A DNA stretch of 64,000 nucleotides, counting the filler, from Octopus bimaculoides (taxonomy: Eukaryota): NCBI RefSeq assembly GCF_001194135.2. It is 5 parts of 4 records of this genome, joined end to end, with 100 filler letters (N's around TTAATTAATTAA, not from the genome) between each part and the next. Parts side by side here need not be neighbours in the genome. Positions count along the whole stretch, not along the records: positions 31,048 to 57,879 come from NC_068982.1; 4 more parts are not named here. One strand, 5' to 3'. Under the pieces are notes generated by a model. That model did no database searches. It saw only the letters and a list, made by a program, of their open reading frames with translations, and was not told where the DNA came from. Of this stretch, positions 36,404-52,850 are shown piece after piece. Each line of letters begins with the position of its first letter. Position 1 is the first letter of the stretch. Made by a program: the position numbers and the translations under genes.

Positions 36404-37334
36404 CGTGCGTGTGCGTGCGTGCTCGTGTTTAATAACGTACCANNNNNNNNNNNNNNNNNNNNNNNNNNNNNNNNNNNNNNNNNNNNNNNNNNNNNNNNNN
36501 NNNNNNNNNNNNNNNNNNNNNNNNNNNNNNNNNNNNNNNNNNNNNNNNNNNNNNNNNNNNNNNNNNNNNNNNNNNNNNNNNNNNNNNNNNNNNNNNNNNN
36601 NNNNNNNNNNNNNNNNNNNNNNNNNNNNNNNNNNNNNNNNNNNNNNNNNNNNNNNNNNNNNNNNNNNNNNNNNNNNNNNNNNNNNNNNNNNNNNNNNNNN
36701 NNNNNNNNNNNNNNNNNNNNNNNNNNNNNNNNNNNNNNNNNNNNNNNNNNNNNNNNNNNNNNNNNNNNNNNNNNNNNNNNNNNNNNNNNNNNNNNNNNNN
36801 NNNNNNNNNNNNNNNNNNNNNNNNNNNNNNNNNNNNNNNNNNNNNNNNNNNNNNNNNNNNNNNNNNNNNNNNNNNNNNNNNNNNNNNNNNNNNNNNNNNN
36901 NNNNNNNNNNNNNNNNNNNNNNNNNNNNNNNNNNNNNNNNNNNNNNNNNNNNNNNNNNNNNNNNNNNNNNNNNNNNNNNNNNNNNNNNNNNNNNNNNNNN
37001 NNNNNNNNNNNNNNNNNNNNNNNNNNNNNNNNNNNNNNNNNNNNNNNNNNNNNNNNNNNNNNNNNNNNNNNNNNNNNNNNNNNNNNNNNNNNNNNNNNNN
37101 NNNNNNNNNNNNNNNNNNNNNNNNNNNNNNNNNNNNNNNNNNNNNNNNNNNNNNNNNNNNNNNNNNNNNNNNNNNNNNNNNNNNNNNNNNNNNNNNNNNN
37201 NNNNNNNNNNNNNNNNNNNNNNNNNNNNNNNNNNNNNNNNNNNNNNNNNNNNNNNNNNNNNNNNNNNNNNNNNNNNNNNNNNNNNNNNNNNNNNNNNNNN
37301 NNNNNNNNNNNNNNNNNNNNNNNNNNNNNNNNNN

Positions 37335-37497
37335 CGAAGAATTCTTGCAGTTCCAAACAATGCTGATTTTTGTAGGTGTTCTACCTTCACAGTTGCACCA
37401 ATCTTTTTCAGCCATGTTGGTATTTAAATGCTGATACTTCCAAGTGCACCAATTACTACTGGTATCACGTCTACTCTCTTCATTGAGGACAACCTTC

Positions 37498-37498
<1 letters not shown>
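37335..37498 (-). mobile_element. Dong-type LINE C-terminal fragment
   Basis: RVDVIPVVIGALGS...KIGATVKVEHLQKSALFGTARILR, adjoining an (ATT)n tract. Confidence 0.8.
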
Positions 37499-43706: not shown

Positions 43707-44723
43707 CGGATAACTAGCGTTCAGATAACTGAGGTTTCAGTGTACCCAACTTCAGCAATAAAGTGAAAAAAAAAAAAAAAAAAAAACTCTTGATCCAGGG
43801 AATATTATGCGAAATCAGTTGTTGAACGCAATCACCGGCACTATGCAATTAAACGGAGCAATTAACTATATTCATATAATTATATGTAATTAAAGAATAA
43901 CAATAAATTATGTTATGAAGCTGAGAGTGATGAAAAGACAGGATTGTTTCCTTTTCGTTATTTACCAATCATGAATGTTAGAGAACCTATCACTCATATT
44001 GGCATTCTCCTCCACTCTAGTTGTTCAAAAACTATTCTCATTTCTTTGTGATTAATTTTCTCCTATGTGTATTTACTGTCCTATAGTGATCTAGACATTA
44101 CTTGAGATTCCATATAACCTGTTTATGTATTTCTCACGTAAATAAAGCTGCCACGAAATTATCAGCTAATCCATAAATATCAAAACTATCGGGAACAGGT
44201 GGAAATTTCTCATCTTTTCAGCATAATATTGATTTAGAAAAATAATAATAATGATAATAATAATAATATGCGAGATATTTTTTCTTTTGTTTTTATTCAA
44301 CGATTCATGATTTTCATCACATGTCTGAATAAAACATCTTAACCATTTCTCGCAGACATATTGTAGCTAATGCATTTTTATGCTCGGTTGCGCACTCAGG
44401 TTATCCAACTTGTGTAGTTGGAAGTAAACATCTAATAATCGAACTTTTTCATTAGCTACTCTGAGTCTGTGCAGGAAATAGTGAACAAGATAGTCGAGTA
44501 GATAGCAAAGCTATTAAAACTACAAGCTTGCTACATTTATTTTCTCTCTCTAGGCAGGGTACTTATTTTAATTCTGCTTCAGTTTTACTTAACCGTATTT
44601 CATGGCATAAAAGATGTACTCCATTTTCAGCAGCGCATATTCAGAAGAATAGTGTTAGATGCTTTAAAGCATCTAATATTTAAAACAACTTCGCACATAA
44701 GACCCAGGGCGACTTTTTGCGAC

Positions 44724-45234
44724 ACCTTCTTCTTCTTCTTCTTCTTCCTCCTTCTTCTTCTCCTCCTCCTCCTCCTCCTTCATCATCATCTTCTTCTTCA
44801 TCATCATCTTCTTCTTCTTCTTCTTCTTTTTCTTCTTCTTCTTCTTCTTCTTCTTCTCCTCCTCCTTCATCATCATCTTCTTCATCATCTTTTTCTTCTT
44901 CTTCTTCTTCTCCTCCTCCTCCTCCTCCTTCTTCTTCTTCTCCTTCTTCTTCTTCTTCTTCTTCTCCTCCTCCTCCTCCTCCTTCTTCTTCTTCTTCTTC
45001 TTCTTCTTCTTCTCCTTCTTCTTCTCCTCCTCCTCCTCCTCCTCCTTCTTCTTCTTCTCCTGCTTCTTCTTCTTCTTCTTCTTCTCCTCCTCCTCCTCCT
45101 CCTTCTTCTTCTTCTTCTTCTCCTGCTTCTTCTTCTTCTTCTTCTTCTTCCTCCTTCTTCTCCTCCTTCTCCTTCTTCTTCTTCTCTTCCTCCTTCTTCT
45201 CCTCCTCCTTCTTCTTCTTTTTCTTCTTCTCCTC
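44724..45234. repeat. (CTT)/(CTC)/(CAT)n triplet low-complexity tract
   Basis: Read directly from the sequence; source of the spurious 480-610 aa ORFs. Confidence 0.95.
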
Positions 45235-46070
45235 NNNNNNNNNNNNNNNNNNNNNNNNNNNNNNNNNNNNNNNNNNNNNNNNNNNNNNNNNNNNNNNNNN
45301 NNNNNNNNNNNNNNNNNNNNNNNNNNNNNNNNNNNNNNNNNNNNNNNNNNNNNNNNNNNNNNNNNNNNNNNNNNNNNNNNNNNNNNNNNNNNNNNNNNNN
45401 NNNNNNNNNNNNNNNNNNNNNNNNNNNNNNNNNNNNNNNNNNNNNNNNNNNNNNNNNNNNNNNNNNNNNNNNNNNNNNNNNNNNNNNNNNNNNNNNNNNN
45501 NNNNNNNNNNNNNNNNNNNNNNNNNNNNNNNNNNNNNNNNNNNNNNNNNNNNNNNNNNNNNNNNNNNNNNNNNNNNNNNNNNNNNNNNNNNNNNNNNNNN
45601 NNNNNNNNNNNNNNNNNNNNNNNNNNNNNNNNNNNNNNNNNNNNNNNNNNNNNNNNNNNNNNNNNNNNNNNNNNNNNNNNNNNNNNNNNNNNNNNNNNNN
45701 NNNNNNNNNNNNNNNNNNNNNNNNNNNNNNNNNNNNNNNNNNNNNNNNNNNNNNNNNNNNNNNNNNNNNNNNNNNNNNNNNNNNNNNNNNNNNNNNNNNN
45801 NNNNNNNNNNNNNNNNNNNNNNNNNNNNNNNNNNNNNNNNNNNNNNNNNNNNNNNNNNNNNNNNNNNNNNNNNNNNNNNNNNNNNNNNNNNNNNNNNNNN
45901 NNNNNNNNNNNNNNNNNNNNNNNNNNNNNNNNNNNNNNNNNNNNNNNNNNNNNNNNNNNNNNNNNNNNNNNNNNNNNNNNNNNNNNNNNNNNNNNNNNNN
46001 NNNNNNNNNNNNNNNNNNNNNNNNNNNNNNNNNNNNNNNNNNNNNNNNNNNNNNNNNNNNNNNNNNNNNA

Positions 46071-46640
46071 AAACTCTTTTGGTTTCAAAGCGAAGAACTC
46101 TGAAATGTCAGTTTCGACCTCCTCCTGGCTTGCGAAAGTTACGTCCCCCAAATGATTCTGTAAACTACGAAACAAATGGTAGTTTGAAGGAGCAAGATCG
46201 GAAGAATAAGTTGGATGAGGAATTTTTTCCCAACCAAGCTCTTGGGGTCGCGCATTGTCCCGATGAAACATCACTCCTTTGCAATTCACTAAAGTAGGTC
46301 TTCCTTTCTTCAAAGCTTGGTTCAAATGCTCTAATTGCTGACAGTAGACTTGAGCATTGATTGTTGCATTAGGTGGTAACAATGCAAAGTGAATTACTCC
46401 TTTGCAATCCCACCAGATAGAGAGAAGAACCTTTGTCCCATGAAGTTCCCTTCTTGGTTGTGGTTGAGCTTTTCCCCGTTTTACCAAGCCACTGTTTACG
46501 ACATTTAACATTTAGATAGAAGATCCATTTTTCGTCAGCAGTCACAAGTCTATCCAAAAGAGTGAAATGAGTTCGCGAGGATGGAGAGAAGAGCAGATGT
46601 TAACTCGGGGTTTGCGGTTACTTTCGCACAATTCATGAGG
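46071..46640 (-). mobile_element. Mariner transposase catalytic-domain remnant
   Basis: LDRLVTADEKWIFY...KVLLSIWWD...FHRDNARP...HPTYSSDLAPSNYHLFRSLQNHL. Confidence 0.9.
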
Positions 46641-50400: not shown

Positions 50401-52071
50401 GAAGATAACTACGGCTTGTTGTTGGGATTGAACTGTAATTATCAATAGCTACCATGCTGATAAACCACGTAGGGAAAACTACTAACAAACTCATTTTGCA
50501 CCAGAGATAATAGATTTAAGAATTTATAATCAGAATGTTTTGTTAGCTTTATATTCATATGTAATTTAGCTGCTGAATTAATTAATTCTGTATTAGAAAA
50601 TACATGCATTCTTGCCATAAAATAGCTGTGAAGATATAATTAACCATGAGAAGGTGTGAAAATCCAGGAATCAAAATATCACACTTAACATTTTCTGTCT
50701 TTCTATGGACTTCGATACAGTCAATGTTGCATGATGTATAGTTAGTTTCAAGACAATATATAACAGAGGATCTCTAGATGTCTTTCTTTTGAGCTTTTCT
50801 TTTCCAGTTAATTCCAGGTATTGGAAATTTTAAGAATGTCCATTGGGGTAACAACGACAAGAGATTATTTGTCTTTTTTATTTCCTACATACCAGCAAGG
50901 ATAGATTTCTTCCAATCTTATTCGCAGAATGATGCTACGAACGTTTCTGCTTTAGACACAAGGCGACTATTTTAGAAGAAGGTAGTTGGTTAGTCGATAC
51001 TATCGATTACAGTACTTGATTAGTATTATATTTTATCGACCCTGAAAGAATGAAAGGTAAATAAAAAAACATCTTTTTTATGCTCTAATGACTACGCCTC
51101 TAACGATTCCGCTAAATCAGTGTGATGCAATAACCAGAACGTGGCTTGCATACATTTTCTGATTCAGGCGCACGATCAGCAACCCTAGAAAAGGGATGTA
51201 AGTTGATAGTAGGGTGGAAGGCACCATGCATTGACATTGTCTTTCAGGTAGTGCGATCGAGTTGGTTAATCTCTGCTTGCGTCAATTTCAGGGTGAATGC
51301 ACTCTAGCGGACTACAGCAACAGCCCATATGTTGATGGCAGTTCCTTGAGTCAAACTCCTCTCGAAGTCAGAACTCAACAGGAGTGGAAATTAACCAACT
51401 CGTTCGCACTACCTGACAAACAATGACAATGTATGGTGCCCTCCACCCTAAGGCGAACGTACACAGGCTTTACATGAAAAGGTGTAAAGATGGGCGTGGG
51501 CTGGTTAGCGTACGGGAGTGCATCAGCAGTGAAAGAAGAAACATGGCAGAATATTTGGTAAATAGCAAACGAGATCTGCTACAGTATGCTACTAATGCAG
51601 AAGGATCTATCAAATATGAACTTGAGAGTGCTAATGAATTCCGATCACGAATAACCAACGAGAGAAAAGAAACTCTACTCCGCATAGAATTACATGGCCC
51701 GTTCCACCGTGAAACTAACCAGGTAGCAACATGGAGGTAGCTCAGCAAGGGTGACCCTAAGAAAAGAAGACTGAAAGCCTAACCATCGCTGCCCAGGATC
51801 AGGCAGTGAACACCAACTGAGTGAAAAGGGATATATACCATACAAATGCAAGGAACCTCTGCATAATGTATGGGAAGAGGGTCGAAAGTCTTGCGTAGAA
51901 AGAGTATAAGCGCAGACACGACAAGGTTCCCCAGAAGTATAGATGCAAGGTAACGAGTGTTTGATACCAACATACACCAGAAAAGGTAATGGGCGAAAAG
52001 GGAAAGGCAAAATCCTCTGGGACTTTGACTTCCAGACAGACAATGTATTAGGACACCGAAGGCCGGATATT

Positions 52072-52285
52072 CTTTTTTACTCTAGGCACAAGTCCCGAAA
52101 TTTTGGGGAAAGGGGGCCAGTCGATTAGATCGATCCCAGTACGCAACTGGTACTTAATTTATCGACCCCGAAAGGATGAAAGGCAAGTCGACCTCGGTGA
52201 AATTTGTACTCAGAACGTAAAGACAGACGAAATACTGCTAAGCATTTCGCCCGGCGTGCTAACGTTTCTGCCAGATCGCCGCTTT
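52072..52285 (-). mobile_element. Full-length SINE family C (3' half of the U6-SINE chimera)
   Basis: Head aaagcggcgatctggcagaaacgttagc through tail cttgtgcctagagtaaaaaag, matching the 13.3-14.4 kb copies. Confidence 0.9.
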
Positions 52286-52289
52286 TTGT

Positions 52290-52342
52290 AAAATATGGAA
52301 CGCTTCACGAATTTGCGTGTCATCCTTGTGCAGAGGCCATGT

Positions 52343-52378
<36 letters not shown>

Positions 52379-52395
52379 ACTGCTGAAGCAAGTAC
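52290..52395 (-). pseudogene. U6: Full-length (106 nt) U6 snRNA retrocopy
   Basis: Minus strand reads GTACTTGCTTCAGCAGTACATATACTAAAATTGGAACGATACAGAGAAGATTAACATGGCCTCTGCACAAGGATGACACGCAAATTCGTGAAGCGTTCCATATTTT. ACAGAGA box intact; the catalytic AGC triad reads AAC; upstream is LINE sequence rather than a U6 promoter. Confidence 0.97.
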
Positions 52396-52783
52396 ACCGA
52401 AGGCCGGATATTGTAACCTTTAGGGGGACACACAAGAGTGCCTAATAATCGACATGAAAGGAAGAGAAAAGATTGATAAATATGGAGACCTGAGAATTGG
52501 GATCGCCAAGGTGTGGCTGCTATGAGAGTCAAACATAAAAGTTGTCTTTCTTGTCATCGGAGCATTGGGTTCAATACAACCTAACCTGAAGAAACATCTG
52601 GAAATTTTAGAAATACCCTACAACCTAGGTGTATTGCAAAAATCGGAATTACTTGGAACTGCACGCATATTGCGTAAAATACTGTCTGTCTGAAGTTCTT
52701 GTGACTTGACAGACAGTACAAACCCCCGGTAGACACAATATCTTCAATCAACATCAGGATACTGGATACTGTGAGACGTCTTA

Positions 52784-52850
<67 letters not shown>

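What the first reader, a model, noticed from the sequence alone, without database searches (positions are those of the whole stretch)
52055..52412. U6 snRNA-SINE chimeric retrogene inserted as one unit with a 17-bp TSD
Seen: accgaaggccggatatt occurs at 52055-52071 and 52396-52412. Between them, on the minus strand, are a complete 106-nt U6, a 4-nt linker (ACAA) and a complete family-C SINE, co-oriented, with no duplication between them. The insertion duplicates the HRRPDI codons of the host Dong's RLE active site. Known: 5' U6 / 3' LINE-or-SINE chimeras arise in mammals by template switching or RNA ligation during L1 retrotransposition, and snRNA-headed SINEs exist in crocodilians. I am not aware of a description in cephalopods. 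Inference: a non-L1 LINE machinery here can join U6 to SINE RNA; if multi-copy with the same junction, this is a new U6-headed composite SINE.
Basis: partly seen in the sequence, partly recalled or inferred. Interest (0 to 1): 0.8.

Follow-up and report, generated by a model that had tools for sequence, protein, structure and literature searches.

The report
U6–SINE chimeric retrocopy in octopus
A dead copy of the U6 spliceosomal RNA fused head-to-tail to a full-length octopus SINE was pasted as one 324-bp block into an old LINE; this by-product of retrotransposition is already known in platypus and lizard, so it is a tidy but ordinary example in a new animal group.

Summary
A full-length U6 (Rfam 106.6 bits, 52289-52395, minus strand) sits a few bases upstream of a co-oriented, full-length, multi-copy octopus SINE (52072-52285). 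The 324-bp block is flanked by a perfect direct repeat of 17 bp (19 bp counting a 2-nt overlap with the U6 5' end), where none is expected by chance. Neither half has a repeat of its own above chance level (6 nt). Removing the block plus one repeat restores a gap-free reading of the HRRPDIV endonuclease motif of a degraded R2/Dong-type LINE.

The best explanation is one retrotransposition event. A LINE reverse transcriptase primed on the SINE tail, reached the SINE RNA 5' end and continued on U6 snRNA. Joining of the two RNAs before reverse transcription is less likely.

The U6 part is dead: its AGC triad reads AAC and it has no promoter. Its TTTT terminator lies between U6 and the SINE, so a self-propagating U6-headed SINE family is unlikely. 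I could not test copy number, because no octopus genome DNA was reachable.

U6-SINE chimeras made by non-L1 LINEs are already published for platypus (Mon-1) and Anolis (AnolisSINE2). This is therefore a new member of a known kind, possibly the first noted in a mollusc.

The parts
52053..52071 (.). Left copy of the target-site duplication (window + strand). In element orientation it adjoins the SINE 3' tail. Its last 5 nt (52067-52071, sense AATAT) may be shared with the SINE tail as priming microhomology.
   Evidence: tail hint
52072..52285 (-). Full-length copy of a multi-copy octopus SINE (about 214 nt). It has a head with A/B-box-like motifs by eye, a conserved core, and a non-poly(A) tail ...CCTAGAGTAAAAAAG. 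The sense strand has no T4 run.
   Evidence: Related peptides occur in Octopus bimaculoides proteins XP_052828027.1, XP_052826731.1 and A0A0L8GQ56, and in Logan/ENA ORFs.
52286..52289 (-). The true length is 1-7 nt, because the SINE 5' end is known only to about 3 nt. It could be non-templated bases added at a template jump, a 3'-added A on U6, or extra 5' bases of the SINE transcript.
   Evidence: other copies conserve a sense xAR codon just before GCGG
52290..52395 (-). Full-length U6 snRNA retrocopy, 106 nt from G1 to the TTTT end (T4 at 52290-52293). It is dead: the AGC triad reads AAC, CCCCUGCGC reads CCUCUGCAC, and there is no upstream promoter.
52394..52412 (.). Right copy of the target-site duplication (17 bp at 52396-52412). 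The 19-bp exact repeat overlaps the U6 5' GT, a 2-nt microhomology at the 5' junction.
51372..52054 (+). Host, upstream part: a degraded, frameshifted copy of an RLE-type LINE (post-RT region, CCHC region, start of the endonuclease up to HRRPDI).
52413..52690 (+). Host, downstream part: the rest of the endonuclease domain (..V-TFRGDTQECLIIDM...LQKSELLGTARILRKILSV*).
52784..52849 (+). (AAT)22 microsatellite closing the host LINE 3' UTR. This fits a Dong-type element, which ends in or inserts into TAA repeats (my knowledge).

Best explanation
This is a bipartite chimeric retrocopy made in one retrotransposition event.

1. A LINE endonuclease nicked the target inside an old R2/Dong-type LINE copy.
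2. Its reverse transcriptase primed on the 3' tail of a SINE RNA (target-primed reverse transcription), possibly helped by up to 5 nt of AATAT complementarity, and copied the whole SINE.
3. At the SINE RNA 5' end it added or copied a few extra bases and jumped to the 3' oligo-U end of a U6 snRNA, which it copied to its first nucleotide.
4. The cDNA end was joined at a second nick 12-19 bp away using a 2-nt GT microhomology. This produced one target-site duplication around the 324-bp unit.

Shown: the anatomy, the single duplication, the clean restoration of the host reading frame, the full length of both halves, and the decay of U6. Inferred: the order of steps, template switching rather than prior RNA ligation, and which LINE supplied the enzyme (candidates in octopus are RTE or Dong). 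The copy was dead on arrival as a composite, because U6 brings no promoter and its TTTT terminator separates it from the SINE.
For: - The 17/19-bp perfect direct repeat sits exactly at the outer ends, with 0 expected by chance.
- No repeat longer than 6 nt surrounds either half alone.
- U6 is complete, model positions 1-105, and ends at its natural TTTT.
- SINE similarity to independent copies runs from the tail (52067-52073) to within 7 nt or less of U6 (52279-52288).
- Both halves share one orientation, with the SINE tail next to the duplication, as target-primed reverse transcription predicts.
- Deleting 52072-52412 gives a host translation ILWDFDFQTDNVLGHRRPDIVTFRG that is colinear and gap-free with 8 homologous LINE proteins.
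- The HRRPDIV motif aligns with the RKPDLI endonuclease motif of solved R2 proteins 9nl2/9nl3/9dou.
- The same architecture (U6 + SINE, TSD-flanked, non-L1 LINE) is documented in platypus and Anolis.
- RtcB ligation needs a 5'-OH partner and typically gives U6(T4) joined directly to 5'-truncated partners. A full-length Pol III SINE RNA (5'-triphosphate, my knowledge) with extra junction bases fits template jumping better.
Against: - Only one locus could be examined; there are no reads, no orthologous empty site and no second chimera.
- The SINE ends are known only from degenerate protein-level comparisons (about 3 nt either way).
- AAAAAG occurs both just 5' of GCGG/CGGCG and at the SINE 3' end, so a two-step origin is not strictly excluded.
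- The mobilising LINE is unidentified.
- Template switching cannot be separated from RNA ligation on sequence alone.
Confidence: 0.8

Rival explanations
1. Two sequential, independent insertions. In one version a U6 retropseudogene with a short A-rich tail (ACAAAAAG) inserted first, and a SINE then landed in that tail with a 6-bp duplication (AAAAAG). In the reverse version the SINE came first and U6 later.
For: AAAAAG is found both immediately 5' of CGGCGATC and at the SINE 3' end. Doucet et al. treat an extra junction base without a TSD as a hint of two events.
Against: - A 6-nt match between two 42-nt A-rich windows is chance level (about 0.3 or more expected, from the reasoning).
- Other SINE copies share the bases on both sides. 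The sense xAR codon precedes GCGG in 6 of 8 copies, and the tail reads ...GTAAA(A/C)AAG(AAT) in P0292, P0293 and the window's second copy. AAAAAG is therefore SINE sequence, not duplicated target.
- The second insertion would have had to hit a window of a few bp without disturbing the outer 17-bp repeat.
- No repeat exists for U6 alone.
- A stand-alone U6 retrocopy needs a relaxed, L1-like machinery, which is not reported as active in octopus.
Confidence: 0.1
2. The same single-event chimera, but the two RNAs were joined before reverse transcription. An RtcB-type ligase joined the U6 2',3'-cyclic phosphate end to a 5'-OH SINE RNA, and the LINE machinery then copied the fused RNA.
For: This route was demonstrated for human U6/L1 and for U6 with other RNAs (PMC6789731). 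Here U6 ends in exactly four T, as in the ligation products described there.
Against: Ligation needs a 5'-OH, and a 5'-triphosphate strongly reduces it. Here the SINE is full length, as expected of a primary Pol III transcript, and 1-7 extra bases sit at the junction, which direct ligation does not predict.
Confidence: 0.15
3. It is one member of a propagating U6-headed composite SINE family, the reader's 'if multi-copy' scenario.
For: snRNA heads have been added repeatedly to SINE 5' ends by template switching in crocodilians (SINEU, U1/U2 heads). The SINE half keeps a T4-free body.
Against: - The only T4 run in the unit is the U6 terminator, placed between U6 and the SINE. A Pol III transcript started at U6 would stop there.
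- U6 uses an upstream promoter that is not carried along (established knowledge).
- The SINE's own promoter-like boxes would start transcription downstream of U6.
- No other U6-this-SINE junction appears among 87 U6-containing ORFs or in the junction-ORF search. This is weak evidence, because octopus is barely represented there.
Confidence: 0.04
4. Assembly artefact: unrelated reads were joined at low-complexity sequence.
For: The piece comes from a gapped draft scaffold (five N runs).
Against: No gap lies within 5 kb of the element (the nearest N run ends at 46069). The 19-bp flanking repeat and the exact restoration of the host reading frame are signatures of real insertion, not of misassembly.
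Confidence: 0.02

Closest known systems
U6-SINE and U6-LINE chimeric retropseudogenes made by non-L1 LINEs in platypus (U6-L2, U6-Mon-1) and Anolis (U6-L1/L2/RTE, six U6-AnolisSINE2); Doucet et al. 2015, Mol Biol Evol, PMC4476161
   Same: U6 lies at the 5' end, a co-oriented SINE at the 3' end, and one TSD surrounds the unit. The partner SINE has a LINE-specific (non-poly(A)) tail, and the event is explained by template switching of a stringent LINE reverse transcriptase.
   Different: The host is a mollusc rather than a vertebrate. U6 here is full length, whereas nearly all platypus U6 segments are 5'-truncated. The TSD is long (12-19 bp, against 1-9 bp in platypus). The LINE partner is unidentified.
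Mammalian U6/L1 chimeric pseudogenes (Buzdin 2002/2003; Garcia-Perez 2007; Moldovan et al. 2019, PMC6789731)
   Same: A full-length U6 ending in its oligo-T is fused to the 5' end of a retrotransposed RNA, flanked by one TSD.
   Different: The partner is a complete SINE, not a 5'-truncated L1. There is no poly(A) tail and no TTTT/AA-type target. Extra junction bases are present. The RtcB ligation route is less fitting here.
SINEU of crocodilians (Kojima 2015, PMC4494074)
   Same: An snRNA sequence is added to the 5' end of a SINE-like retroposon, probably by template switching.
   Different: SINEU heads are U1/U2 (Pol II snRNAs), and SINEU are true multi-copy families with thousands of copies. 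Here the head is U6, only a single copy is known, and an internal terminator is present.
Bipartite/tripartite chimeric retrogenes of Magnaporthe (MINE/WEIRD with MGL LINE; PMC2104539)
   Same: They show that chimeras made by template jumps of LINE reverse transcriptases occur outside mammals.
   Different: The organism, the LINE and the partner RNA all differ, and no U6 is involved.

Membership tests
U6 chimeric retropseudogene (snRNA + retrotransposon, 'Group IV' of Doucet et al. 2015) | U6 sequence at the 5' end, in the same orientation as the 3' partner | tested here: met
   U6 lies at 52289-52395 (-) and the SINE at 52072-52285 (-).
U6 chimeric retropseudogene (snRNA + retrotransposon, 'Group IV' of Doucet et al. 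2015) | Fusion at the natural 3' oligo-U end of U6, directly or with very few extra bases | tested here: met
   U6 model positions 1-105 are matched and the copy ends TTTT. Then 1-7 nt follow before SINE similarity begins.
U6 chimeric retropseudogene (snRNA + retrotransposon, 'Group IV' of Doucet et al. 2015) | The 3' partner is a retrotransposed LINE/SINE/mRNA copy ending in its own tail next to the TSD | tested here: met
   The SINE is multi-copy in Octopus bimaculoides. Its tail ...GAGTAAAAAAG abuts the repeat, and the tail is shared with a second copy in the window.
U6 chimeric retropseudogene (snRNA + retrotransposon, 'Group IV' of Doucet et al. 2015) | One target-site duplication around the whole unit and none at the internal junction | tested here: met
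   The outer repeat is 19 bp and exact. Repeats around either half alone are 6 nt or less. The empty site is restored by paralogy.
U6 chimeric retropseudogene (snRNA + retrotransposon, 'Group IV' of Doucet et al. 2015) | Empty site in an allele or related species | not testable with these tools
   No cephalopod genome DNA was reachable.
Composite snRNA-headed SINE family (SINEU-like) | Many copies with the same internal junction at different loci | tested here: inconclusive
   No second junction appears in the protein-derived searches, but octopus DNA is essentially absent from the searchable collections.
Composite snRNA-headed SINE family (SINEU-like) | The unit can be transcribed as a whole | tested here: not met
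   A T4 Pol III terminator lies at 52290-52293, between U6 and the SINE. The U6 promoter is external (established knowledge), and upstream of U6 lies only TSD and LINE coding sequence.
Functional U6 snRNA gene | Invariant catalytic core (ACAGAGA box, AGC triad) intact and an upstream promoter present | tested here: not met
   ACAGAGA is intact, but AGC reads AAC and CCCCUGCGC reads CCUCUGCAC. The 5' flank is the interrupted LINE ORF.
tRNA-derived SINE | Head recognisable as a tRNA | tested here: not met
   ARAGORN finds nothing. No tRNA model hit appears at E<=10 in Rfam. Only A/B-box-like motifs are seen by eye. The element is still a SINE by copy number, size and tail.
Host: RLE-bearing LINE of the R2/R4/Dong group | PD-(D/E)xK restriction-like endonuclease C-terminal to RT, preceded by a CCHC motif | tested here: met
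   The profile of the host plus 8 homologs hits R2 structures 9nl2/9nl3/9dou (E about 2e-9), with RRPDIV aligned to RKPDLI. Homologs keep the CxxC...HxxxxC motif, which is degraded in this copy.
Host: Dong clade specifically | Phylogenetic placement of the RT; (TAA)n at the 3' end | tested here: inconclusive
   (AAT)22 lies at the 3' end, and a Dong element is reported in O. bimaculoides. No RT domain is left in this copy and no tree was made.

The most novel reading that the evidence does not exclude
U6-SINE (and U6-LINE) chimeras are recurrent in octopus genomes. They would then mark a template-jumping, currently active LINE reverse transcriptase, such as the RTE reported as expressed in octopus brain. 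In the extreme version, this particular U6-SINE junction is shared by many loci and defines the first U6-headed composite SINE.
Probability: 0.05. Interest if true: 0.6.

Novelty: new member of a known kind. Interest (0 to 1): 0.3.

Why it matters
The locus extends a well-described side product of LINE activity, U6 chimeric retrocopies, from vertebrates to a cephalopod. It indicates that whichever LINE mobilises this abundant octopus SINE can continue from the SINE onto U6. A genome-wide catalogue of such chimeras would be a cheap way to identify which octopus LINE (RTE or Dong) drives SINE expansion, and to date that activity. That bears on the debate about retrotransposon activity in octopus neurons. 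As a single decayed copy it has no functional consequence: it sits in a dead LINE.

Tried and rejected
**Searching for the junction or SINE in DNA collections**
- Exact or gapped scans for the junction and the SINE head in JGI metagenome contigs found 0 hits.
- A SINE core scan of GTDB genomes and IMG/VR gave only chance 18-mer hits in prokaryotes.

**Reaching same-species DNA through proteins**
- The junction ORF returned only the U6 half from unrelated eukaryotes.
- The host-LINE pseudo-protein had a best hit of 45-52% identity. Two ENA loci (L011, L012) hold no SINE and share no nucleotide similarity with the piece.
- The mariner fragment's best hit was Limulus.
- Ten window ORFs are not in the 15-billion-protein collection.

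**Literature and supplements**
- A full-text search for SINE sequence strings found nothing.
- The O. vulgaris transcript supplement of PMC9115989 holds no copy of the SINE head or of U6.

**Other tests**
- tRNA origin of the SINE head was not detectable.
- RNA folding of the SINE was uninformative (z = -2.1).

**Readings considered and rejected**
- A genuine U6 gene: rejected because the AGC triad is mutated, there is no promoter, and it lies inside a TSD.
- AAAAAG as a second TSD: rejected because it is shared SINE sequence and a chance-level match.

I did not look up contigs for the octopus proteins found by the representative search, because the tool restricts look-ups to other sources.
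Full report
**1. The observation**

The 17-mer ACCGAAGGCCGGATATT occurs exactly twice in the window, at 52055-52071 and 52396-52412. Even with two mismatches allowed, no shuffle of the window produced a match. Read directly, the exact repeat is 19 bp (52053-52071 and 52394-52412). Its last two bases are also the first two bases (GT) of U6.

Between the repeats, on the minus strand, Rfam finds a single, untruncated U6 (RF00026, model positions 1-105, 106.6 bits against a gathering score of 44) at 52289-52395. It is the only Rfam family hit in the whole 26.8-kb piece. U6 runs from G1, immediately next to the repeat, to its natural ...CCAUAUUUU end, followed by an A.

**2. The SINE half**

Downstream of U6, in the same orientation, lie about 214 nt ending ...CCTAGAGTAAAAAAG directly against the other repeat copy. 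My piece holds no second full copy. It does hold a diverged relative at about 50943-51082 (minus strand) that shares the core and the tail: CTTGTGTCTAAAGCAGAAACG against CTTGTGCCTAGAGTAAAAAAG.

No cephalopod DNA could be reached (see section 9), so I used the fully open 72-codon antisense frame of the element as a protein probe against 1.84 billion representative proteins. It returned 17 hits. The named ones are Octopus bimaculoides proteins: XP_052828027.1, XP_052826731.1/XP_052826730.1 and UniRef A0A0L8GQ56. The rest are ORFs on Logan/ENA contigs. The element is therefore a genuine multi-copy octopus repeat, and the window very probably comes from Octopus bimaculoides or a close relative.

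Mapping these proteins back on the window shows that similarity spans the whole element; P0293 covers 52067-52288. At the 5' end it runs to 52279-52288, that is, to within 7 nt or less of U6. The codon just beyond ..H-R is L or F in 6 of 8 copies (sense xAR before GCGG).

At the 3' end, P0293 and the second SINE in P0292 share I-F-F / I-L-V-Y-S-R, which back-translates to ...GTAAA(A/C)AAGAAT(AT). The terminal AAAAAG is therefore SINE sequence. The tail may even extend 5 nt (AATAT) into what looks like the duplication. If so, those 5 nt are priming microhomology and the true duplication is 12-14 bp. This last point rests on degenerate codons and is only suggestive.

The head shows A/B-box-like motifs by eye, but neither ARAGORN nor the Rfam tRNA model at E<=10 recognises it. 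I do not call it tRNA-derived.

**3. One insertion or two?**

A scan for direct repeats around each candidate unit gives three results:
- 19 bp for the whole unit.
- 6 nt (TTACAA) for U6 alone.
- 6 nt (AAAAAG) for the SINE alone.

Six-base matches between two 42-nt A-rich windows are expected by chance about once in three trials or more. Both AAAAAG occurrences lie in sequence shared with other SINE copies (section 2). There is thus no second duplication.

Removing 52072-52412 (the 324-bp block plus one repeat) gives a host translation ...GKILWDFDFQTDNVLGHRRPDIVTFRGDTQECLIIDM... It aligns without any gap to eight homologous LINE proteins (consensus ILWDFxIQTDRxIEHRRPDIVVV). This is an empty-site test by paralogy, and it fits a single clean insertion.

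**4. The host**

The interrupted sequence is a frameshifted, stop-ridden copy of a LINE C-terminal region: + strand 51372-52054 and 52413-52690. A profile of it and its homologs matches solved R2 retrotransposon proteins (9nl2, 9nl3, 9dou; E about 2e-9). HRRPDIV aligns to the R2 restriction-like endonuclease motif RKPDLI/YKPDLI, and the CCHC region aligns upstream.

The 3' UTR ends in (AAT)22 at 52784-52849. From my own knowledge this is typical of Dong, and a Dong element is reported in the O. bimaculoides repeat library (PMC9115989). 'RLE-type LINE' is shown. 'Dong' is plausible but not tested phylogenetically.

**5. State of the U6 copy**

Against the Rfam consensus, the invariant core carries AUUAGC changed to AUUAAC (the AGC triad) and CCCCUGCGC changed to CCUCUGCAC. 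Against the canonical metazoan U6, all seven internal differences are G>A or C>T transitions, three of them at CpG (the reference was typed from my knowledge). Two of the seven (positions 3 and 17) are compensatory in the 5' stem and may be lineage-specific.

Upstream of U6 there is only the duplicated target and LINE coding sequence, so there is no promoter. This is a decayed retrocopy, not a gene. About 3-4% decay is compatible with the perfectly preserved 17-bp repeats: about 1.3 changes are expected over 34 bases, so P(0) is about 0.25.

**6. Mechanism**

The arrangement is what target-primed reverse transcription with a template jump predicts:
- The SINE tail lies against one repeat copy.
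- A full-length SINE is followed by a few extra bases and then by a full-length U6, ending exactly at its 5' nucleotide against the other repeat copy with 2-nt microhomology.

The alternative for the joining step is RtcB ligation of the U6 2',3'-cyclic phosphate to a 5'-OH RNA. It requires a 5'-OH, is strongly reduced by a 5'-triphosphate, and typically yields U6(T4) joined directly to 5'-truncated partners (PMC6789731). A full-length Pol III SINE transcript plus extra junction bases fits that less well. I therefore favour template switching, at roughly 0.6 against 0.15. Sequence alone cannot decide.

The enzyme source is not identified. The SINE has no poly(A). In O. bimaculoides only an RTE (with evidence of recent activity) and a Dong have full-length ORFs in the repeat library. 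A non-L1 machinery is therefore likely.

**7. Could it be a new U6-headed SINE family?**

This is unlikely. The only T4 run in the 324-nt unit is the U6 terminator at 52290-52293, between the two halves, and the SINE body has none. U6 relies on an upstream promoter that is not carried along (established knowledge). Transcription from the SINE's own internal elements would start downstream of U6. The locus could at most give rise to plain SINE RNA.

The junction-spanning ORF found only the U6 half in 87 proteins from unrelated eukaryotes. None of those 87 carries this SINE in any frame. That is weak negative evidence, because octopus is barely represented there. The genome-wide count remains undone.

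**8. What is known**

Doucet et al. 2015 (PMC4476161) describe the following:
- TSD-flanked U6 chimeras with L2 and with the SINE Mon-1 in platypus.
- U6 chimeras with L1-, L2- and RTE-like LINEs in Anolis.
- Six U6 chimeras with AnolisSINE2 in Anolis.

They conclude that template switching to U6 is a general property of non-LTR retrotransposons. SINEU of crocodilians have U1/U2 heads, not U6 (PMC4494074). Chimeric retrogenes made by LINE template jumps also exist in a fungus (PMC2104539). I found no paper linking U6 chimeras to molluscs or cephalopods, but the library is partial. This locus is therefore a new member of a known kind in a new phylum.

**9. Dead ends**

- Metagenome, GTDB and IMG/VR DNA scans found nothing relevant.
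- Host-LINE and mariner protein searches reached no cephalopod contigs.
- Window ORFs are not in the protein collection.
- Sequence strings were not found in papers or in an octopus transcript supplement.

As a result I could not test the copy number of the junction, find an orthologous empty site, derive a nucleotide SINE consensus, or identify the partner LINE.

**10. Verdict**

The single-event chimera is well supported (confidence about 0.8). The composite-family extension is unlikely (about 0.04-0.05). The kind of event is already known, so interest is modest (0.3).

Noticed in passing
window 50943-51082 (minus strand): A diverged remnant of a related SINE shares the core (..CCTTTCATTCTTTCAGGGTCGATAAAATA..) and the tail (CTTGTGTCTAAAGCAGAAACG) with the SINE of the chimera, but it has a different or unrecognisable head.
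   Followed up: partly
window 51197-51273 and 51387-51463: A 77-nt inverted repeat (83% complementary) lies here. The segment 51199-51339 on the minus strand encodes the same part of the LINE protein (AINxWAVAVxR...LDRxT.KTMxMHGAxHP) as the start of the + strand host copy. The host is therefore either two head-to-head LINE copies or one copy with a twin-priming-like 5' inversion plus duplication.
   Followed up: partly
window 52784-52849: A perfect (AAT)22 microsatellite lies at the 3' end of the host LINE, about 95 bp after its stop codon. This fits a Dong-type element ending in or inserted into TAA repeats.
   Followed up: partly
window 37334-37498 (minus strand): A second copy of the C-terminus of the same LINE family (..LQKSALFGTARIL..) runs into the N gap at 36443-37334.
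   Followed up: no
window 44673-46511 (minus strand): A mariner-type transposase remnant is interrupted by an N gap and flanked by long low-complexity purine/pyrimidine runs. Its best match is a Limulus SETMAR-like protein at 73% identity, and no cephalopod hit appeared in the collection.
   Followed up: partly
window 52073-52288 (+ strand, antisense of the SINE): The antisense strand of the SINE is an uninterrupted 72-codon frame. The same SINE-derived peptide (..SIRSTPVRNWYLIYRPRKDERQ..) is built into annotated Octopus bimaculoides proteins, including the N-terminus of a 706-aa protein (A0A0L8GQ56). These are probably exonised SINEs or gene-model artefacts.
   Followed up: partly
window 52290-52395: All seven internal differences of this U6 copy from the canonical metazoan U6 are G>A or C>T transitions (three at CpG), with no transversion and no A>G. 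This fits deamination-type decay and shows no trace of the A-to-I editing for which octopus is known.
   Followed up: partly
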